Source: Rebecca billardiae RCC1528 | Taxonomy: Eukaryota > Protista > Haptophyta | Direction: 5' to 3' | Assembly (NCBI GenBank): GCA_965240325.2 | Contig: OZ251223.1 | Coordinates: forward strand, 1,798,001 to 1,862,000 | Length of the DNA: 64,000 nucleotides | Shown: piece by piece, positions 21,099 to 43,200 of the stretch | How positions within the stretch are numbered: the stretch's first letter is position 1 | Layout of the letters: each line of letters opens with the position of its first letter | The notes under the pieces: generated by a model | The model's database searches: none | Told to the model about the DNA's origin: nothing | What the model saw: the letters and a program-made list of their open reading frames with translations, nothing else | Made by a program: the position numbers and the translations under genes

Positions 21099-24000
21099 AT
21101 GCTGACCGAGGAGATCTCGTCGGCACTGCCGGGGTTCTCGCTGAAGAAGCCCTCTGGGACCTCAGCGCTCGACCAGCCGGGAAAGGCGCTGTTTGTGACA
21201 GTGCTGGCCTGGTCAGTGTACTCGATCCTCATCGGCAGCGCATGGTACCTCGAGTCCGCCAACTCGACGCCGCTCAAGCCGCTCGAGGCGTCTGTCGCGG
21301 TGATTGCGTCGGCAGTGACGTTCGCAGCGCTCACCATGCGCCTGGTCATGGTGGTGTCCTCCAAGAATGGGCTGCCCCAGGGCGTCACGATCGTGAGCTT
21401 CTCGATCACCGCCATGTCCGCGCTGACGAGCGGCATCATGGGCACGTGCGCAACGCCCATCATCATCGACCCCGTGACGAATTGCCAGGTGTACATGTTC
21501 CGCTGGTGAGCGTCGCTGCGGCCTGGCGCCGAGGCCTCGCGCGCCGCGAGCCGCGCCGCCCGGCCGCCCACGGCGCCTGTGCCCATCCCCGCGCCGTCCG
21601 CAGGTGCGAGTGGGTGGTCCTCTCCTTCCTCATGTCCTTCATCGTCGAGGCGATCGACAACAACGCGCACCTGACCATGGCGTGGGTCTTCGCGAGTTCG
21701 ATCTCCCTCTCGACGGCGTGCGGGCTCGTCCTGCCGTACATGAACACCCTGCTCAAGTGGTGGGCGGTGATGGTCTTCTCGTTCATCACGTACTTTGCCA
21801 TCTTCCCGCACGCGTACCTCAAGTGGCGCGGCTCGCGGCAGCACCCGCCCCTCGACACGCCCGGGCTCACGCCGCGCGCGCGGGAGGCGGCGCGGCGCGC
21901 GCACGTGGCGTTCAAGCTGATGCTCGTGTGCTCCATGCTCTGGACGTGGTTCGTGACCATCTACTTCCTCGGCTGGCTGCACGTCCACTTTGTGAAGCCG
22001 TGCAGCATGGAGGAGCAGCCGCACTTCCCGTTTGTGCTGGACACGCTCACGGACGTCTTTGCAAAGCTGGTGTACACAAGCGTCATCTCGCAGGTGGCGG
22101 AGTCGGTGCCGGACAGCTTCGTGGCGGAGGAGGTGAAGTGGTTCGTCGAGCAGATGAGCGTCGTGTGGCGCCGCTCGACCGACGTGATCGTCATCTCGAC
22201 GCCCGTCTCCTCAGAGCTCGCGCTCCGGGCCAAGCACCTTGCAGAGGCCGCCGCGCTCCGCGGCTCCGACGATGGCGGAGGCGCGGGTGGCGGCGCCGGA
22301 GGGGCGAGCGCGCCCTCGGTGCCGAGCACGATCGCGGTCGAGACGAGCGCGTCCGCCAGCCTGCGCGCACTCATCGGCTCGGAGGCCGACCAGTTCTGCC
22401 AGGGAAAGATGCACGCGGTCGACCTGTCCACGCCGTCGTCGAGCGCGCACCGCGGCGACGACGCGGAGCCGTGCTGCTTCCAGCACATTGTCGAGGACGC
22501 GTGGCGCGCGTCGCTCGGCGTGCGCGCCGACGGCGAGGTGATCGCGCTGCGCTCGTCGGGCTGGCGCGTGCGCGGCGCGGACGGGCAGCTGGTGCACCTC
22601 GAGGCGCACATCTCCTCGATCGCGGACAAGTCGGCGCTCGTGGTCGTCGTGCGCGACGTCACCGACAGACTGCGGCGGCACGAGGCCGAGATGCAGCTGG
22701 TGACCGAGCAGGCGGAGAAGAAGCTGATCGCGCAGACGGTCGCGCGGCAGAAGGACGAGGAGACGAACCGCTTCACGCGGCACGAGGTGAAGAACTCGAT
22801 GCTCGCCGCGATGAGCACGTGCGACGGGCTGCGCGAGATGCACGAGTCGGGCGTCGCGTCGGGCGCGATCGTCAACTCGGACTACGACATCGCGTTCCAG
22901 CGACGCGTGAAGGAGCTGGGCTCGACGCTCAAGAGCACGCTCGACGTGGTGCTGGCGCAGGCGATGGCGCGCGACGTCGTGCACGGCTCGTACACGCCGC
23001 GGCACGAGGCGGTGCAGCTGGACAAGGTGCTCGCCATCGCGGAGGGCAGCACCGAGCGCTTCAAGCAGACGGTCTGCCCGAGCCCCTTCCCCTCGCTCTC
23101 GCTCGACCCGGCGCTGATGCACCTCGTGTACCGCAACGCGCTCTCAAACGCGTGCAAGTACGGCGCGAGCGGCATGCCCGTGCACACGCACCTCGAGCAC
23201 GACGGCTGGACGCTCACCGTGCGCGTGACCAACGCGGCCGGCCCGGGGCACGAGCGCGTGCGCCGCATCGAGGACCCGGGCCGGATCTTCGAGAAGGGCG
23301 TGCGGCTGCACACCGAGGCGGACAGCGGGCTCGACAGCGGGCTCGCGACAATCTCGGCGGGCGACGGCGCGTGGATCATGCGCAGGTGTGCCGAGGCGCT
23401 CGGCGGCAGCTGCTCCATCCGCTTCCTCGAGGACACGACCGTCTTCGAGCTGCGCTGCCCGGCGCTCGTGCACGTGACGCCTAAGCAGGTGGAGAGCTTC
23501 GCCGTGCCCGGCACCGCGCTCGCGTGCGCGATCGACGACTCGCCCGTGCAGCGGCTGCTGCTGCGGAAGTCGCTGCTCGTGCTCGGCTTCGACTACAAGC
23601 GCGTCGAGGTCGCCGGCGAGTCGGACGACGACATCGAGCGCTTCGACGAGCGGCTCGTCAAGCTCGTGCGCGACAACCCGAGCGCGCGCGTGCTCGCCGT
23701 CGTCGACGAGAACCTCGAGCTCTCGGACCGCATGCGCACGGTCTCGGGCTCGCTGCTCGTGCAGCGCGTGCGCTCGACGCTGAGCGACGCAGAGGAGGCG
23801 CGGCTGCTCGCCGTCGTGCGCTCGGCCAACGACTCGCCGACCGACCTCGCCGTGTACATGGAGCGCGCGCACGCCGTCGTCCCGAAGGAGTCCTTCGACG
23901 AGCTCAAGGTGCTCGAGCGCTTCGCGCCGCTGTGGATCCAGCGCTTCGGCATGCCGGCGCACGCGCCCATCGAGTCGTTCGGGCTCGGCGTCGACGAGCT

Positions 24001-24286
24001 CGAGGCCAAGTTTGCAGAGGAGGTGCGCGCGCTCGTGGCGGCGGTCGACGCGCACGCGCTGGGCGCATGGCCGCGCGTATGGCCGCTGCTGCATCAGATC
24101 AAGGGGCACCTGCGCACCATGTCGCAGCAGCCCCCCGGCCGCGCGGCGAGCGTGAAGGCCATCACCACGCGCATCGAGCTGTACAGAGGCCGCGCCGACC
24201 CGCCGCCCAGGTTTGCGGATGAGGAGTGGCCCGAGCTGCGCGCGCTCATCACGAGGCACCTGCAGCTGTCGGGGCACGCGCTCTAA
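21099..24286 (+). CDS. Microbial rhodopsin (8 TM) fused to PAS/PAC-like, HisKA, HATPase, receiver and Hpt-like domains; exons 21099-21505, 21604-24286
   Basis: Removing intron 21506-21603 (GTGAG...CAG) creates the helix-C motif YMFRWCEW; helix F LWTWFVTIYFLG; helix G TDVFAKLVY (Lys codon 22064-22066); VRDVTDR; H-box RFTRHEVKN (22781); N-box NALSNACKYG; IFEKG; receiver AIDDS/VVDEN/RSAN/VPK; C-terminal LHQIKG. Confidence 0.85.
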
Positions 24287-25516
24287 GACGACCGACACAG
24301 TCTAGGACTCGTCACTAGGCACTAGCAGACGACGTAGTCAGTATGACAGCCACTCCAAGACGGATGAGATCGTCAGCGGCATCGATCTGGCTGCTGACTC
24401 GCCGATGAGTCATGAGTCACATGCTAAGATAGTGAGCAGTCAGTCGAACTCGACTGATCATCGATCTATCTACATCACTCACTAGTCACTGACTGTCGTC
24501 TGACAGGCCCGCGCCCAGAGTGGCAGTTAGTGAGCCTGCTTGTCGAGTGAGTAGTGAGCAGTCACGTGATGACTCCTGCTCCGTCACCTGCTACAAGTAC
24601 TCAGGCAATATCGCGTCGCGGGCCAATACTAGGAGCTGTCACGTTAAGAAACTGGGGCTTGCTATCTGCGGATCTGGCGCCTAGAAACTGAGACTGGCGA
24701 TATTGGCCGCTGGTTCCGCTATACGCATATAGTCACACTGTACTGCTCAATAAAACTGGGACTACGTCGTTGCGGCTGACGAGTGGTCCGCCGAGGCGCA
24801 CTGCCCGTGGGACGCGGCGCGCGCGGCCCGATTACGAGTAGCTATACAGGCCAAGTCCCGACTTCTCCTGATGACTGACTCCTGGCCAGTGCACCGCAGC
24901 ATCCATGCATGGTCATCATATGCCATATTTGCTCCAAAATGGCCCAACATTTTTCTTCGGCCTCGCCGGCCGGGCCTAAAGACTCAGCGGGGGGCTCAGG
25001 CTCAGCCCCCCTGCGCCCCCCGCGCCTGCGCGGCGGGCGGACCTAGCTAAGTAGAAACGGAGACTCTGTAGGCGCTCGGGCTACCGAACGGCTAAGAAAC
25101 CGACGAGACTAGCCGCAGTGAGAGGCTCTGGCTTCTTATTTATTGATGCCCGCGCCATTATTGCCATTATTATTGGCATTGCCTGTCTGATAACTCAGAC
25201 TACACAGTAAAGAAATCGATTTTCGGCGTTACCGTAACCCGTCCGCACTTCCGCCCAGTGGGGATGCGGGGGATTTTTTTTCATGCCCCGTTCGCGGCAC
25301 TTCGCGCCGCGATACAGTAGCTTCTAGTACTTAGTAGAGCGGCGGTGTACTGGCGTGCGGTCACAGTGACAGAGTGACTGAGTGGTCACTGTTAGTCTGT
25401 GACTCACCTAGTACTAGTCTCGCCGGGGCCGCGGTCACTACTAGCTCTCTCTCTCTAGCTCTCAGTCTCTCTCTCTCTCTACAGATTGCAGACTCGTCGT
25501 CTTGTGCGCCTCGTCA

Positions 25517-27512
25517 TCAGCCACCACCGCCGCCAGCGCCGACACCGTCGGCCGCGGCAACGACGGCACCGCTAGTGATGCGGTCATGGTGTTCGATGGG
25601 CGTTTGGCGTAAGGGGCTGGGCGGTGCCGTGGTCGAGCGGCAATGCGGGCACACGCGGCACGCGGCGCTGCGGCTGCGCCTGTCGTCGCTGAGGCCGCGG
25701 CGACTGCTAGCTGGCTCCGACTCCGATTGAGCGCGAAGCCTCCCATGGTCCTCGTCACGAGCCGCAGGCCTCGCCGCCGGGAGGTGAAAGCGTGGGACCG
25801 AAGCGAACGGGCGAGCGACGACGACGGGCGACGGGCTGGGCGAGGGTACTCCGAGCAGCACAGGCGCCGAGTCCTGGTGCCCGAGCAAGCTTGGCGTCGC
25901 CGCCGACCTCGGTGCCGGCGGCTTCTCCTCCGAGTAGGCGCGCCTCATGCGGTGGTGGTGCGGCGCGTGTGCGCTGAGCTCGGCCTCGCGTGGCGTGGGG
26001 GCGGCGCAGACGTGGCCAGCGCGCCGAGGGCCGGCCTTGTGGGGGAGCCCTGTGAGCGCGGCAAGCCGCTCGGTGAAGACTCGAGCAATCGACGCCTCGT
26101 ACGCGCGCCCGCCCTCGCCAGCCGCCGCGCCCGGCCCGGGCGCGAGCCGGCGGCCGCACGCGCGCGCGATGTGCGCCTTGGCCTTCTGCAGCCCGTCCTT
26201 CTCCTTGGAGATGTACCCGTCCACGCCCGCCGAGGCGTACAGGCGGCGGTGCGCGCTCGAGCCGTTGCACGAGACGATGAAGGCGACGAGGTTGCGCGCC
26301 GCCTCGGGCACGCGCGCGCGCACGCGCGAGATCACGTCCGTGCCGCTCGGCACGCCCTCGCCCAGCTCCTGGTCGGAGAAGAGGATCACAGGGCCGGCGC
26401 GCACGAGCGAGCTGAGCGTCTGCTCGTACTCGAGGAGGTGGGCGCGCTCGGCGGCGGGGCTGTCGGCGTCGAGCGGCGGGATGACGAGCGGCTTCACGCC
26501 GCACGGGCACAGCGACGCCACCACGCGCGAGCGCACGATCGTGCGCGTGAGGCGCGAGTCGTCCACGACGACCACGCTCGCGTGCGGCGGGATGCGGAAC
26601 TGGTCGAGGACGGCGCTCTCGGCGTCGGTGTGCAGCGCGACGGGCGCGCAGAGGCGCAGCCACGTGTCGCCGCGCTGCTCGCACTCCGCGGCCCAAATGG
26701 CGCTCCCGCCGAGCGCAGCGGCGCACTTCTCCACGAGAAGCCTGCGGCGTGAGGCACGGTGGCGGTGGGCAGGGGCATCGTGAGCGGAGCGGCGCACGCG
26801 CGCGGCGCCGGTGGGCGAGAGGGCGCGCCGGCGCGCTCGGGTGTGCGCCGAGCTGACGCGCGCGCGCGCGCGCGCACCAGCTAGGATCGGAGAGCTGGTC
26901 GAGAATGATGTTCTCCTCGCGCGCGCCGAGGTCCTCGGCGCCGCGCGCATCGAGCGCACAGTCGATGACGAGCGTGGACTGCTCGACAGACACGCGCAGC
27001 TGCATGCGGCTGCGCACGCCGAGGGCGGCGACCGCCTGGGCGGCGGCGGAGACGGCCGTCCGGATGGGCACCTGGTCCACCTCCACCTCGCAGAAAGGGT
27101 CTGCATCGATCGCCACGTCGGCTGCGAGTCCGGCCGCATCGATCACGTCGCACAGCCGCACAGTGCAGGGCGACGGCTCGTACTCGCCCTTGGCGAGCGC
27201 CAGGCGCGCGATGGTGCCCTTGAGCACGCCCATGGCGTCGCGGATCTCTCGCGACGCCGTGGCGAGCGCAGGACGCGCACGTGCACCCGCATTGGCGCCC
27301 ATGAGCGCCTCGTCGGCGAGCAGCTGATCCAGAATCGAGGTGGCGCGTAGGAGCGGGTTGACCATGCCGTCCTCGAGCACGTGCAGAGGCGCGTCGATTG
27401 CGTGCGCGGAGCTCAGGCTGGTGCTGCTAGCACTCGAAACCTCGGAGTGCGTCATTGAGAGATTCGTCCGTGGGAGCATGCTCGGCGGCCACGCATGTTC
27501 TGAGTCCACCAT
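25517..27512 (-). CDS. Degenerate histidine-kinase-like domain + receiver (REC) domain + disordered tail; intron 26742-26877
   Basis: Splicing TG|GTGCGC...GCAG|G joins two ORFs to give DPSWLLVEKCAAALGG (compare GAWIMRRCAEALGG in the neighbour). LAKGEYEP parallels VVHGSYTP. Receiver residues VVDDS, FSDQEL, IVSCN and YISK are present. Confidence 0.75.
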
Positions 27513-28232
27513 TGTGTTGGTACGCGACGGCGTGGCCGCGTGGCGAGGCCGGCGCGAACAATTTGGATGAGGGCGTTGTCGGGAGGAAAGACGTGCGGGG
27601 AGCCGCTGCGAAGGCCCAAACCACGGCACGGATCGGTGTTTTTGTGCCGCGCTTCGGCCGCCAGTCTGATCACCCGGAGCCCGTTATAAAGGGGAATTTA
27701 TATGCTTGCGGAATTCGCAGGGCCGTGTCTTCGCAGCTTGTATGGGGGTACTTACGGCCTCCTGACCATCCTAACCGTACTTTCATCAGAATCATGTAGT
27801 TCATCGATGAATCACCCCAGAATCCTGAATTCCAGGCTGCCGATCTGACCAATCTCGGCCTTTCGCGCTTCGGCGCTCTAAACGCGACAAAATCTGCTCC
27901 CGCCTTCGACGCATAGGACGTTCTTGGTTGACATAGCAATGCCGCCAATGCGGTTAAATCCTACAGATTCATCGACGAAAGACCTCGGGGGGGGGGGGGG
28001 GGGCAGTCCCAAATGAGGAGAGAGCCAATCGCGATGCTCGCCATTTACAACCTTGGCCAATCTTCGTCAACCTCTGCCTCGGCGCTCACAAACAATGAGC
28101 TACGGGGAATCGGCACCTTCTCAAACCGATTCCGTATTCATCATAGTTGCCGTGCTTTTACCTGTATTACTCACATGACTAACCACAACTTGACTATCAT
28201 AGCCCGTCCTTCGACAAGTACGAGCTCACACG

Positions 28233-40204: not shown

Positions 40205-43200
40205 TCAGGCGTTGCTTCGTCGGCCGGTTGGCCCGACCTGACCGCGCGCCGGCAGTCCAGCGCCGCCGCGCGCAGGGGCCTCACGAGCTGTGGCCGGCGC
40301 CGTACTCGCTGTGCGCGGCTCGTCCGCCGAGCTCTCGCCGCCGCCGATGACATGGTAGTCGTACTGCTCGCGCCGGCGGTCGAGCGCGCGCGCGGCGCGG
40401 TTGAGCACGAGCACGGACGAGGTCGTCGCGACGGCGGCGGCGGCGAAGAGCAGCCAGCAGCCCGCCTCGAGGTGCGCGACGATGCCGAAGCAGCGCGGGT
40501 CCTCGTCCACAAAGTCGAGCGCGTACCGCGCGAGCAGCGCGTTGAGCTCGTCGCACCGCCCCTTGAGCACGAACTGCGAGAACTGCTCGATCTCGGTCAC
40601 GGCGACCAGCAGCGCGAGCACAAAGATGTCGACGCCCGACCACGCGTTCACCATCTGCGCGAGGACGTAGCCCGCGGACTGCGCGCGCAGCGGGAGCGGG
40701 ACGGCCCAGAGCAGCGCGACCAGCGGGGGCAGCGCGAGCGGCATCGCGAGGTGCACGAGGAAGAAGATGAACAGCTGCCACACCGAGCCGGCCGAGAGCG
40801 GCGCGTACCCGGCCGCCTCCGTGAGCTCGAGCCCGGCGCCGATCAGCGAGAAGCGCCTCACGCGCGCCTCCTCGCCGAGCACGGTGCCGGCGAGGCCGGT
40901 GAACTCGAAGGAGAAGGCGGTCGCGCTCGCGCCGAGCACGACGAGCGCGAAGGAGAGCGGCAGCCCCAGCAGCGCGAGCGCGAGCAGCGCGCGGTCGCGC
41001 GCGCTCTCGTGCGGCAGCGCGCGCGAGAGCGACGACCATTGCCGGTACGGTCCGGCCGCGGTCACGTGCGCCGGCGGCTCGAGCCGCTCCGCCGCGGGCA
41101 GCGAGGCCTGCGCGCGGCGCGCGTGCGAGCGCCGCCGCTCCTCCGTGGCGCGGTGGAACGCGAGCACGGTGTGCGAGAGCAGGATCGAGAAGAGCGTCGC
41201 CGCCATCAGCCCGTACAGCCCGAAGCGCGGCTCGGCGCGCACCGTGAGCGTGCCGGCGCTCAGCCCGCCCAGCCACTCGGCCGGCACCGCGACGCGCATG
41301 TAGAACGCGACGCTCATCATCTGCATGACCGAGACATCGATGAGGGACCACTTGCCGTACGTGTGCAGGAAGGCGAGCAGCCGCTCGCGGTGCAGGGCGG
41401 GCAGCCACTGCGGCGGCACCAGCCAGAGGCACAGCATCCCGCCCAGCTTGAGATACGGCCAGCCGCCCGAGAAGAAGGCAATCACAGCTGCGAGCGGGTA
41501 GGTGCCCGCTGCCCACATGTCCGCGATCGTGTTGTCGAGGGAGAAGGCGAAGAGCGGCGGCGGGGTGAGCACCAGCCCGAAGGGCGTCTCGACGCGCACG
41601 ACCACCTCCGCGCCCACGCTCACGTTCGCCCAGAGGAAGAGCGCAAAGTCGAGCACGATCAGCGCGGCCATCAGCGCGCCGAACCGCGGGCTGGCGGCCG
41701 CCAGGCTGGTCGTCCACGCGGGCTCGAGCGGCGTGGCGCTGCGGCTGCCGAGCGCGGGCGCGCGGCTGGCGGCCGGCGCGGGGAGCGCAGCGGTCGACGG
41801 CGTGGGCGCGCGACTGCCCACGCCACTGCGCGCAGTGCCTTCCGCGGGCGTGGGCGCGCGGCTGCCCACGCCGCTCTGCGGTGGCGTGCCCGATGGCGTG
41901 GGCGCGGCGCTGCCGACAATGCTGGCCCACAGGCCAGTGGCGGGCGTGGGCGCGCGGCTGCCCACGCCGCTCTGCGGTGGCGTGCCCGATGGCGTGGGCG
42001 CGGCGCTGCCGACAATGCTGGCCCACAGGCCAGTGGCGGGCGTGGGCGCGCGGCTGCCCACGCCGCTCTGCGGTGGCGTGCCCGATGGCGTGGGCGCGGC
42101 GCTGCCGACAATGCTGGCCCACAGGCCAGTGGCGGGCGTGGGCGCGCGGCCTGCCGCACGGCTCGCGCCCTCGTGGAGCGGCTGAGGCACCGCGGCTTGC
42201 TCCTCCTCGTCAGCGCCCTCGCCCGCTCGGCCCGCGCCGGCCGCCCTGCCGCCATCGGCCACGTCGCTGCCGCCGGCTGCCGCTGGCCTCAGCCAGCTGA
42301 GCAGCGCGCGCGCGCCTGGCAGCGCGCTCGCGCCCGAGCGCTCCAGCCAGGAGGGGGCGCCGCCGCCCATGACGTGCACGGTGACCGCGTCCGGCCGGAG
42401 CGGCGGCGCGCCCGGGGAGCTCAGCGCGCCGCCTGCGCCGCCCGCCGCGCCCGCGCGCGCGCCCGCGACTCCGCCGCCACCGCTCTCGACAGCCCGCGCG
42501 CGCGGCGCTGCCTCGATCGGCTTGTGCCCCGCGCGCCGCCAGCGCACCCACCAGCGCGCGTACCACGCGCTCCCGACGACGAGGGCGAGGCCGAGCGCGC
42601 CGATCGCCGCGAGCGTGCCGCCGAGCAGCCCCGCGTCCTCCGCGGCGCGCACCTCGCGCGCCTCCTCAGCCAGCTCGGGCACCGCCGTGCGCCGGCACTC
42701 GGCGCGCGCCTCGGCCAGCCTCCCCGCCACCCACTCGTTGAGCGGGCGCAGCAGCAGCTCCTGCATGCCGTACGCGAGCCCGTCGTTCAGCGCGGCGGTG
42801 AGGCCGGCGTCGGCGCTCGCGAGCGCGTCGGCGAGCGCGCCGAGGTCGAGCGGCTCGCCCGTCGCCGCCGCGCTGCCGCTGCCCTGCAGCTCTGACAGCC
42901 GCAGCGCCAGCTGCTCGACTCGCAGCCGCGCGGCGCTGAGGGTGAGCCCGCCGCGCGCGGCGCTGCCCAGCAGGCACTGCACGCCGTTGCCGTCGATCAG
43001 CGCGCCGACGCTCACGCCGAAGAGCTCGTCCTGCTCGACGAGCAGCTGCACCTCGTCCAGGTCGACGTGCAGCGCGCGCATCGTGCCGTTCGCGACGAAC
43101 GACGCGAGGATATCCGCGCCCATGCCCTCGTAGTCGACGGCGGCGCGCACGCCCGCGCGCAGCGGGCGGCCGCCGTCCGCGTCGCCGCCGAGCGTGAAGC

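What the first reader, a model, noticed from the sequence alone, without database searches (positions are those of the whole stretch)
21099..24286. Hidden enzyme-rhodopsin: 8-TM microbial rhodopsin driving a complete one-chain phosphorelay (HK-REC-Hpt)
Seen: the rhodopsin helix-C motif is split by an intron and appears only after splicing (R-W-C-E-W). Helix G has D-V-F-A-K, eight hydrophobic segments are present, and H-box His, receiver Asp and an Hpt-like HxxKG follow. Known: RxxD/EW and DxxxK are the counterion and retinal Schiff-base motifs of type-1 rhodopsins, and an extra TM0 is typical of enzyme rhodopsins. The characterised HK-rhodopsins I know of are green-algal. Inference: a light-regulated hybrid kinase in a non-green alga, with an Hpt rather than a cyclase output. 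The pocket is unusual: bacteriorhodopsin T89/P91/D96 align to L/F/I and the helix-F YP to FV, suggesting distinct spectral or photocycle behaviour.
Basis: partly seen in the sequence, partly recalled or inferred. Interest (0 to 1): 0.85.

Follow-up and report, generated by a model that had tools for sequence, protein, structure and literature searches.

The report
Hidden rhodopsin-histidine kinase phosphorelay gene
This intact two-exon gene of a very GC-rich, haptophyte-type alga joins an eight-helix retinal-type light sensor to a histidine kinase, a receiver and a phosphotransfer domain. It belongs to a large haptophyte and diatom family that standard domain searches do not recognise as rhodopsins.

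Summary
Exon 1 (21099-21505) and exon 2 (21604-24286) are joined across a 98-nt GT-AG intron that splits the Trp136 codon. This gives a 1029-aa protein that reads F-R-W-C-E-W at the junction.

- **Membrane domain:** Pfam does not see it. A profile of 67 relatives hits almost only microbial rhodopsins in the PDB, best the 8-TM rhodopsin phosphodiesterase (E 1.7e-8). It places Glu138, Asp286 and Lys290 on that protein's Glu164, Asp292 and retinal-binding Lys296. Lys290 and Arg135 are invariant in 66 relatives.
- **Fold:** an AlphaFold model of the closest complete relative (pLDDT 91.8) matches rhodopsin structures.
- **Downstream domains:** a weak PAS-like stretch; a divergent histidine kinase (His529); a receiver (CheY Z 14.7; Asp837); and a four-helix tail carrying His966 in H-x-x-K-G.
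- **Relatives:** Pavlovales haptophytes are nearest, and diatoms form the sister clade.

I found no paper describing this family. Published histidine kinase rhodopsins are green-algal. The scan has already followed up at least eight paralogues elsewhere in this genome.

Pigment formation, light control and expression of this copy are untested. My verdict is a new variant of a known kind (enzyme rhodopsins).

The parts
21099..21505 (+). Exon 1. Met1 to the first two bases of the Trp136 codon. Holds the cytoplasmic N-terminus, TM0, helices A and B, the B-C hairpin and the start of helix C.
   Evidence: First in-frame ATG after a stop. Residues 27-136 align to relatives. The family rhodopsin profile A1 hits this frame piece at E 5.6e-25.
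21506..21603 (+). Intron, 98 nt, GT-AG (GTGAGC...CCGCAG). An in-frame TGA lies at 21507-21509.
   Evidence: Frame change between the two ORFs. Only this splice restores the family motif R-W-C-E-W. The alignment to the transcript-derived P0187 has no gap across the junction. No RNA reads could be listed.
21604..24286 (+). Exon 2. Third base of the Trp136 codon through the TAA stop.
   Evidence: Continuous ORF. Collinear with Pavlova gyrans and Pavlovales sp. CCMP2436 proteins to about residue 1016.
21177..22096 (+). 8-TM rhodopsin domain (residues about 27-300, interrupted by the intron). TM0 30-48, A 62-86, B 96-123, C 131-154, D 161-182, E 185-208, F 235-258, G 277-300, continuing as a cytoplasmic helix.
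   Evidence: Hydropathy. Profile A1 against the PDB: 17 of 18 hits are microbial rhodopsins, best 7cj3 at E 1.7e-8. AlphaFold model of relative P0001: pLDDT 91.8, eight helices plus a B-C hairpin. Foldseek: best is the rhodopsin phosphodiesterase membrane domain, then bacteriorhodopsin and sensory rhodopsin II. Language-model features point to Bac_rhodopsin clusters.
21501..21610 (+). Helix-C motif Arg135-Trp136-Cys137-Glu138-Trp139, spanning the intron. The Glu138 codon is 21608-21610.
   Evidence: Arg 66/66, Trp 60/66, Glu 60/66, Trp 60/66 in the family. Aligned to R-Y-A-E-W of rhodopsin phosphodiesterase, where the Glu is Glu164, the equivalent of bacteriorhodopsin Asp85.
22052..22066 (+). 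Helix-G motif Asp286-Val-Phe-Ala-Lys290. The Lys290 codon is 22064-22066. Predicted counterion and retinal Schiff-base lysine.
   Evidence: Lys 66/66; Asp 51 plus Glu 12 of 66. Aligned to Asp292 and Lys296 of rhodopsin phosphodiesterase and to D-V-V-M-K of bestrhodopsin.
22097..22681 (+). Helical linker and weak PAS-like region (residues 301-495), with a Gly/Ala-rich insert at 355-372.
   Evidence: NCBIfam sensory_box E 0.012, below cut-off. Family profile A4 against the PDB: PAS sensor 3bwl at E 0.23 only, matching the first and last PAS elements. PAS_9 in 4 of 54 relatives. Weak.
22682..23491 (+). Histidine kinase core (residues 496-765). The H-box is N-R-F-T-R-H-E-V-K-N with His529 (codon 22781-22783). 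The N-box is R-N-A-L-S-N-A-C-K-Y. The G1 box is atypical, N-x-x-G-x-G. The G2-like box is S-A-G-D-G-A-W.
   Evidence: Pfam HATPase_c 25.6 bits against a cut-off of 26.4; relatives reach 30 bits. Profile A3 against the PDB: 14 of 15 hits are histidine kinases, best E 1.4e-4. Conservation.
23510..23947 (+). Receiver domain (residues about 772-917). Asp780, Asp781, phospho-acceptor Asp837 (codon 23705-23707), Ser876, Lys897.
   Evidence: AlphaFold model of the window's own sequence, pLDDT 92.4. CheY Z 14.7, rmsd 2.3. Foldseek CheY TM 0.76-0.79. The five residues are kept in at least 41 of 44 relatives. Pfam Response_reg does not call it.
23990..24268 (+). HPt-like four-helix bundle (residues about 932-1024). 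L-H-Q-I-K-G with His966 (codon 24092-24094) in the middle of the second helix.
   Evidence: Four helices at high confidence. His 26/33, Lys 31/33, Gly 33/36 among relatives that have the tail. ESM Atlas shape match to a Response_reg+Hpt cluster, TM 0.61 over residues 7-264. Profile A2 against the PDB: CheA P1 at E 0.5 with L-H-T-L-K-G aligned, and designed bundle 2lch at E 0.0094. Relative P0187 carries precomputed PF01627, and P0098 is named 'HPt domain-containing protein'.

Best explanation
The region is an intact two-exon nuclear gene for a 1029-aa membrane photoreceptor kinase.

**Sensor.** An N-terminal type-1 (microbial) rhodopsin domain has an extra helix TM0. It most likely binds retinal through a Schiff base at Lys290, with Asp286 and Glu138 beside it and Arg135 below. 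It lacks a cytoplasmic proton-donor carboxylate (Ile149), as expected of a sensor rather than a pump.

**Proposed mechanism.** Light-driven retinal isomerisation would move helices F and G. Helix G continues as a long cytoplasmic helix into a linker and a PAS-like module, and this would change the activity of a dimeric histidine kinase. The phosphoryl group would then pass His529 -> Asp837 (receiver) -> His966 (HPt-like bundle) within the same chain, and on to an unidentified response regulator.

**Shown here:** the gene model, the homology and fold of the rhodopsin, kinase and receiver domains, and the presence and conservation of every key residue.

**Inferred:** retinal binding, the sign of light control, kinase activity and the relay order.
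For: - **Gene model:**. The splice is confirmed by gap-free alignment to 66 relatives and to a transcript-derived Pavlova gyrans protein.
- **Rhodopsin:** the exhaustive search found 189 relatives. The family profile hits rhodopsin phosphodiesterase 7cj3 at E 1.7e-8, followed by bestrhodopsin, ChRmine, cyanorhodopsin and sensory rhodopsin II. That alignment puts Glu138, Asp286 and Lys290 on Glu164, Asp292 and Lys296, which the crystal-structure paper defines as the Asp85 and Asp212 equivalents and the retinal lysine. Arg135 and Lys290 are invariant and Trp249 is 64/66. The AlphaFold model has pLDDT 91.8 with eight helices and a B-C hairpin. Foldseek returned 111 PDB matches at E <= 0.001; the 50 listed are all microbial rhodopsins, with the 8-TM rhodopsin phosphodiesterase first.
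- **Kinase:** HATPase_c is borderline for this copy and above cut-off in relatives. The family profile hits 14 histidine kinases in the PDB. The H-, N- and G2-boxes are conserved.
- **Receiver:** CheY Z 14.7, with the full D-D-D-S-K set.
- **HPt:**
- **Architecture:** the whole layout is conserved across haptophytes and diatoms, and relatives occur in transcriptomes.
Against: - No experiment and no RNA evidence exists for this copy.
- Pfam calls no rhodopsin, receiver or HPt domain on it.
- The rhodopsin fold was predicted for a relative that is about 39% identical, not for the window's own spliced domain.
- The pocket departs from well-studied rhodopsins: Leu, Phe and Ile at bacteriorhodopsin positions 89, 91 and 96, and no helix-F proline.
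- The kinase G1 box is N-x-x-G-x-G instead of D-x-G-x-G, so ATP binding is not assured.
- HPt sequence support is weak: E 0.5 to CheA P1, and Pfam Hpt in only 4 of 44 relatives at E <= 0.1.
- With many paralogues in the genome, an individual copy could be redundant or decaying, although its ORF is intact.
Confidence: 0.72

Rival explanations
1. The 8-TM domain keeps the rhodopsin fold but no longer acts as a retinal photoreceptor. It would sense another membrane or chemical cue, or act only as an anchor, while the kinase relay works as usual.
For: Pfam Bac_rhodopsin misses the domain and recognises only 2 of 67 relatives. Unusual residues sit at bacteriorhodopsin positions 89, 91, 96, 185 and 186. 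No pigment data exist. I could not check whether the genome can make retinal.
Against: The Schiff-base lysine is invariant in 66 of 66 relatives. Arg135, Glu138, Trp139, Trp249 and Asp286 are also strongly conserved, which is hard to explain without a chromophore. Bestrhodopsin also lacks the helix-F proline in the aligned column.
Confidence: 0.12
2. The rhodopsin is functional but the cytoplasmic part is not a working His-Asp-His relay. The kinase would be degenerate (a pseudokinase or phosphatase-only), and the tail would be a structural four-helix bundle rather than an HPt.
For: The G1 box is atypical. HATPase_c scores just under the Pfam cut-off and HisKA is not called. Profile hits to solved kinases are only about 1e-4. 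Pfam does not call HPt for this copy. Other paralogues in the genome were noted with histidine-less tails.
Against: His529, the N-box asparagines, the G2 glycines, the receiver quintet and His966-x-x-Lys-Gly are all present here and conserved across two algal phyla. The aligned HprS kinase in the PDB also lacks the G1 aspartate in that column. The REC+tail model matches REC+Hpt proteins as a two-domain unit.
Confidence: 0.1
3. This particular copy is a silent or decaying paralogue of an expanded gene family.
For: At least eight related genes were noted elsewhere in the genome. No RNA run could be listed. A Gly/Ala-rich insert sits in the linker.
Against: The reading frame is uninterrupted for 1029 aa, the intron has canonical splice sites, and every conserved catalytic or pocket residue is intact.
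Confidence: 0.05

Closest known systems
Rhodopsin phosphodiesterase of Salpingoeca rosetta (Rh-PDE; PDB 7cj3, 7d7q)
   Same: Best sequence-profile match (E 1.7e-8) and best fold match. Both have 8 TM with an N-terminal TM0, so both termini are cytoplasmic. Both have the R-x-x-E-W helix C, with Glu rather than Asp, and D-x-x-x-K in helix G. Both have a non-carboxylate residue at the bacteriorhodopsin Asp96 position, and helix G leads into a cytoplasmic enzyme.
   Different: About 14% identity. The output here is a histidine kinase relay, not a phosphodiesterase. Leu142 and Phe144 stand where Rh-PDE keeps Thr and Pro. The host is a choanoflagellate versus an alga.
Green-algal histidine kinase rhodopsins (Chlamydomonas HKR1/COP5, Ostreococcus Ot-HKR, two-component cyclase opsins)
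   Same: The same design logic: rhodopsin, then histidine kinase, then receiver in one chain, as described.
   Different: Those are reported from green algae, and many end in a guanylyl cyclase. None is described with a fused HPt. This protein has a PAS-like spacer and an HPt-like tail, no cyclase, and a rhodopsin domain that Pfam misses. I could not obtain their sequences, so common descent versus independent fusion was not tested.
Bestrhodopsins (PDB 7pl9)
   Same: Third-best profile hit. Helix C is V-R-Y-M-E-W, helix G is D-V-V-M-K, and a non-proline residue sits in the helix-F column of bacteriorhodopsin Pro186. They also occur in haptophytes.
   Different: The rhodopsins there are fused to a bestrophin channel, not to a kinase. 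E is only 0.005.
Bacterial 'unorthodox' hybrid sensor kinases (ArcB, BvgS, GacS, TorS type)
   Same: Kinase, receiver and HPt in one polypeptide, carrying out a His-Asp-His relay (established knowledge). The receiver model matches the GacS D1 receiver domain at Z 14.0. An ESM Atlas REC+Hpt cluster matches the two-domain model.
   Different: Their sensors are periplasmic or PAS domains, not rhodopsins. Sequence similarity of the kinase core is low.

Membership tests
Microbial (type-1) rhodopsin | Seven-helix bundle of the bacteriorhodopsin fold | tested here: met
   AlphaFold model of the closest complete relative (pLDDT 91.8). Foldseek top 50 are all microbial rhodopsins, target-normalised TM 0.55-0.80, most 0.67 or above. 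The window's own spliced domain could not be submitted to the folding tool.
Microbial (type-1) rhodopsin | Lysine in helix G that forms the retinal Schiff base | tested here: met
   Lys290 aligns with Lys296 of Rh-PDE and the D-x-x-x-K lysine of bestrhodopsin and ChRmine. Invariant in 66/66 relatives.
Microbial (type-1) rhodopsin | Helix-C Arg and counterion carboxylates (helix C Asp/Glu, helix G Asp) | tested here: met
   Arg135 66/66; Glu138 60/66; Asp286 51 Asp plus 12 Glu of 66. Aligned to Glu164 and Asp292 of Rh-PDE.
Microbial (type-1) rhodopsin | Match to the curated family model (Pfam PF01036 Bac_rhodopsin) | tested here: not met
   No hit at E <= 1 for either exon product. Only 2 of 67 relatives match at E <= 0.1. 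This is a limit of the model's reach: a family profile does reach solved rhodopsins.
Microbial (type-1) rhodopsin | Binds retinal and forms a pigment | not testable with these tools
   Needs expression with all-trans retinal and spectroscopy.
Enzyme rhodopsins (8-TM) | Extra N-terminal helix TM0 and a cytoplasmic enzyme domain after helix G | tested here: met
   Eight hydrophobic segments. TM0 aligns with TM0 of Rh-PDE in the profile match, which starts at chain residue 26, and appears in the model (helix 16-44). The kinase follows.
Histidine kinase rhodopsins (green-algal HKR family) | Rhodopsin + histidine kinase + receiver in one chain | tested here: met
Histidine kinase rhodopsins (green-algal HKR family) | Phylogenetic grouping of the rhodopsin domain with Chlamydomonas/Ostreococcus HKRs | not tested
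   No HKR sequence or structure was available through the tools, and the PDB search returned none. The nearest solved relatives are Rh-PDE and bestrhodopsin.
Histidine kinase (HisKA/HATPase_c) | H-box histidine on a DHp helix | tested here: met
   R-H-E-V-K-N with His529. The His is nearly invariant in 43 relatives. Pfam HisKA itself is not called.
Histidine kinase (HisKA/HATPase_c) | ATP-binding N, G1 and G2 boxes; curated HATPase_c score | tested here: inconclusive
   The N-box and G2-like box are conserved. G1 is N-x-x-G-x-G instead of D-x-G-x-G. HATPase_c scores 25.6 bits against a cut-off of 26.4 for this copy and 30-31 bits for some relatives. 14 of 15 PDB profile hits are histidine kinases.
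Response-regulator receiver (REC) | CheY-like (beta-alpha)5 fold with Asp-Asp, phospho-Asp, Ser/Thr and Lys | tested here: met
   Z 14.7 and rmsd 2.3 to CheY. Asp780, Asp781, Asp837, Ser876 and Lys897 are kept in at least 41 of 44 relatives. Pfam Response_reg is not called.
HPt (histidine phosphotransfer) domain | Four-helix bundle with an exposed His in an H-x-x-K-G motif on the second helix | tested here: met
   Helices 168-189, 194-211, 217-230 and 242-260 of the modelled piece; His at position 202, which is His966.
HPt (histidine phosphotransfer) domain | Significant match to HPt sequence models or solved HPt structures | tested here: inconclusive
   No Pfam Hpt hit for this copy, and 4 of 44 relatives at E >= 0.014. 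CheA P1 E 0.5. The structure lists were filled by receiver matches, so the tail was not searched alone. An ESM Atlas REC+Hpt cluster matches the two-domain model at TM 0.61. Relatives are annotated as HPt.

The most novel reading that the evidence does not exclude
This gene and its relatives are a previously undescribed clade of enzyme rhodopsins that standard domain annotation cannot see. It would be a retinal photoreceptor wired to a complete His-Asp-His phosphorelay. It is present in many copies in haptophytes and diatoms, so it would be a major overlooked light-signalling route in marine phytoplankton. It may have arisen independently of the green-algal histidine kinase rhodopsins.
Probability: 0.55. 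Interest if true: 0.8.

Novelty: new variant of a known kind. Interest (0 to 1): 0.7.

Why it matters
Diatoms and haptophytes carry out a large share of ocean photosynthesis. Their photoreceptor inventories are built from Pfam rhodopsin domains, as in the Pelagomonas study read, which searched PF01036, PF18761 and PF10192. This family escapes those models: 2 of 67 members are recognised. A whole class of candidate light sensors is therefore missing from such inventories.

If the proteins bind retinal, they extend light-controlled two-component signalling beyond green algae. They would add a one-chain His-Asp-His relay as a new enzyme-rhodopsin output. They would also offer an unusual retinal pocket: Glu counterion, Leu/Phe/Ile at bacteriorhodopsin positions 89/91/96, and no helix-F proline. 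That is of interest for spectral tuning, photocycle studies and optogenetic kinase tools.

Tried and rejected
- **Word-indexed protein search** with the membrane part plus linker (exon-2 residues 1-330) found nothing. The Gly/Ala-rich insert probably swamped the candidate list. The exhaustive search and a later search on residues 380-893 did work.
- **Single-sequence search of the PDB** gave only chance hits. Family profiles were needed.
- **NCBIfam** gave only sub-threshold kinase and PAS hints.
- **Alternative splice choices** (donor 21489 or acceptor 21610) stay in frame but delete conserved residues, so I rejected them.
- **RNA evidence:** no sequencing run could be listed.
- **Intron conservation:** the Pavlovales sp. 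CCMP2436 relative has its only intron in the E-F loop, not in helix C. The intron position is not shared and gives no extra support.
- **More copies in the window:** neither tblastn nor the family profiles found one. Only a weak receiver hit in the neighbour appeared.
A relative was folded instead.
- **ESM Atlas shape search** with the rhodopsin model added little.
- **Seven paper searches** found no description of a rhodopsin-kinase-HPt family outside green algae. The library lacks most subscription journals, so this is not proof of absence.
Full report
**Observation.** The window is about 70% G+C. Two long plus-strand ORFs in different frames overlap the finding. The first runs from the first in-frame ATG at 21099 to a TGA at 21507-21509. 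The second runs on to a TAA at 24284-24286. A canonical GT-AG intron of 98 nt (21506-21603, GTGAGC...CCGCAG) joins them in frame and splits the Trp136 codon (TG|G). The product is 1029 aa and reads Y-M-F-R-W-C-E-W-V-V-L at the junction. Two other in-frame GT-AG combinations exist, but they delete residues that the family conserves. The spliced protein aligns without a gap across the junction to 66 relatives. One of them is a Pavlova gyrans protein derived from a transcriptome (P0187). It is collinear with residues 33-1015 at 39% identity and reads Y-M-I-R-W-C-E-W-T-T-L at the same place. No public RNA run could be listed for the locus, so the splice rests on homology.

**The membrane domain is a rhodopsin that curated models miss.** Pfam and NCBIfam report nothing rhodopsin-like on either exon product. 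A single-sequence search of the PDB is blank.
- An exhaustive HMMER search with helices C-G found 189 relatives at E <= 0.001. None was more than about 39% identical over the full stretch.
- A language-model look-up pointed to Bac_rhodopsin clusters. This is a lead only.
- I aligned 67 membrane domains (A1). The profile hits the PDB almost only on microbial rhodopsins, 17 of 18 hits. Rhodopsin phosphodiesterase 7cj3 scores E 1.7e-8 from TM0 through helix E. Bestrhodopsin, ChRmine, cyanorhodopsin-II and sensory rhodopsin II follow.
- In those alignments R-W-C-E-W lies on R-Y-A-E-W of the phosphodiesterase, and D-V-F-A-K lies on D-Y-A-A-K. Counting chain positions, these are Glu164, Asp292 and Lys296. 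The structure paper identifies them as the equivalents of bacteriorhodopsin Asp85 and Asp212 and as the retinal-binding lysine.
- Across 66 relatives, Arg135 and Lys290 are invariant. Glu138 is 60/66, Trp139 60/66, Trp249 64/66, and Asp286 is Asp or Glu in 63/66.
- An AlphaFold model of the closest complete relative (P0001 residues 1-318, with A1 as its alignment) has pLDDT 91.8 and pTM 0.88. It shows eight helices, a B-C beta-hairpin and a helix G that runs on into the cytoplasm.
- Foldseek returned 111 matches at E <= 0.001. The 50 listed are all microbial rhodopsins, with the 8-TM phosphodiesterase domain first.
- Only 2 of the 67 domains reach Pfam Bac_rhodopsin at E <= 0.1. 'Hidden' is therefore a fair word, for two reasons: the intron and the divergence.

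**The pocket.** With no gaps in helix C, bacteriorhodopsin positions 89, 91 and 96 fall on Leu142, Phe144 and Ile149. The phosphodiesterase has Thr, Pro and Trp there. In helix F the bestrhodopsin alignment places Trp249, Phe252, Val253 and Tyr256 in the columns of bacteriorhodopsin Trp182, Tyr185, Pro186 and Trp189. Bestrhodopsin also lacks the proline. What it means for colour or kinetics is open.

**The cytoplasmic part.** The family shares the whole downstream architecture.
- *Linker and PAS-like region, residues 301-495.* The start and end resemble the first and last elements of a PAS domain, but only weakly: sensory_box E 0.012, PAS protein 3bwl E 0.23, and PAS_9 in 4 of 54 relatives.
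- *Kinase core, residues 496-765.* It has the H-box N-R-F-T-R-H-E-V-K-N (His529), a standard N-box and a G2-like S-x-G-D-G-A-W. The G1 box is N-x-x-G-x-G rather than D-x-G-x-G. HATPase_c scores 25.6 bits against a cut-off of 26.4 here, and 30-31 bits in some relatives. The family profile hits 14 histidine kinases among 15 PDB matches, best E 1.4e-4.
- *Receiver and tail, residues 765-1029.* I folded the window's own sequence with 43 relatives (A2) and obtained pLDDT 92.4. The first domain is a receiver: CheY Z 14.7 at rmsd 2.3 and Foldseek TM about 0.78. It carries Asp780, Asp781, Asp837, Ser876 and Lys897, each kept in at least 41 of 44 relatives.
- *The tail.* It is four helices with His966 in L-H-Q-I-K-G in the middle of the second helix. 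Among relatives that have the tail, His is kept in 26 of 33, Lys in 31 of 33 and Gly in 33 of 36. Sequence support for HPt is weak: CheA P1 E 0.5 with L-H-T-L-K-G aligned, and Pfam Hpt in 4 of 44. Supporting it, the two-domain model matches an ESM Atlas cluster whose members are Response_reg plus Hpt (TM 0.61 over residues 7-264). The Pavlova gyrans relative carries a precomputed PF01627 hit, and the Diacronema lutheri relative is named 'HPt domain-containing protein'.
- No cyclase or other output domain is present.

**Where the family lives.** Named relatives are Pavlova gyrans, Pavlovales sp. CCMP2436, Diacronema lutheri and a Chrysotila/Pleurochrysis protein among haptophytes. Among diatoms they include Cylindrotheca, Fistulifera, Seminavis, Skeletonema, Thalassiosira, Cyclotella, Cyclostephanos, Epithemia and Detonula. 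Nearly all are labelled hypothetical or 'histidine kinase', and none has a precomputed rhodopsin domain. Several come from transcriptomes, so relatives are expressed.

I built a maximum-likelihood tree of the kinase-receiver region. It used 31 rows: the named proteins plus a few unnamed top hits, and all other hits were left out. The tree splits into a haptophyte clade and a diatom clade, each supported 100/100. The window protein pairs with a metagenomic protein (98/95), next to the Pavlova and Pavlovales pair. The host is thus most likely a Pavlovales-like haptophyte. I did not identify the species.

**Earlier notes of this scan.** At least eight related genes elsewhere in the same genome have already been followed up, with the same conclusion. 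My results were obtained independently and agree. This copy has the HPt histidine, which some paralogues were noted to lack.

**Literature.** The papers I could read describe histidine kinase rhodopsins as green-algal. A 2026 survey of about 40,000 rhodopsins lists canonical and non-canonical HKR clusters and 17 uncharacterised clusters, and names none that matches this architecture. A survey of eukaryotic histidine kinases required Pfam kinase and receiver domains and did not link multi-TM kinases to rhodopsins. A 2026 Pelagomonas study built its rhodopsin inventory from Pfam domains. I found no description of this family. The library is incomplete.

**Mechanism and rivals.** The most likely reading (about 0.7) is a retinal photoreceptor whose helix F/G movement is passed through the helix-G extension and a PAS-like spacer to a dimeric kinase. 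A His529 -> Asp837 -> His966 relay would follow, as in bacterial ArcB- or GacS-type kinases. The sign of light control is unknown. The rivals are:
- a retinal-free sensor with a rhodopsin fold. The invariant lysine and the conserved counterion set argue against it.
- a degenerate relay. The atypical G1 box and weak model scores argue for it; the conserved phospho-acceptor residues argue against it.
- a silent paralogue. The intact ORF argues against it.

**Verdict.** It is a new variant of a known kind (enzyme rhodopsins of the histidine-kinase type). It differs from the known kind by a divergent rhodopsin clade, a fused HPt and its algal lineages.

Noticed in passing
window 40205-63928 (-): A single uninterrupted ORF of 7,907 aa fills the last third of the window. 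Pfam finds only a PqiA-like stretch near its C-terminus (E 1.8e-10) and a sub-threshold AroM hit. It accounts for the constant GC of about 0.70 and the AT skew of about +0.2 over 44-62 kb.
   Followed up: partly
window 25517-27629 (-): The convergent neighbour consists of two overlapping minus-strand ORFs in different frames. One is a divergent kinase-like N-part. The other is a receiver-like C-part (V-V-D-D-S ... S-D-Q-E-L ... S-G-T ... S-C-N-G-S ... Y-I-S-K-E). The family receiver profile hits it weakly (E 6.9e-5); the kinase and rhodopsin profiles do not. It could be a relay partner or a decayed paralogue. The scan already noted it.
   Followed up: partly
L001:1501-4542 (Pavlovales sp. CCMP2436, KAJ1631140.1): This relative has one 102-nt GT-AG intron after residue 188, in the E-F loop, not in helix C. 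Intron positions therefore differ between family members.
   Followed up: yes
window 41795-42160: A tandem repeat with a 96-bp period (two 48-bp half-units), 3.3 copies, 99% matches. It lies inside the giant minus-strand ORF.
   Followed up: no
window 24290-24560: The 3' flank of the gene drops to about 62% GC. It is rich in short GTCA/TGAC/CTGA-type words (for example tcactcactagtcactgactgtcgtctgac). Tandem Repeats Finder reports no array there.
   Followed up: partly
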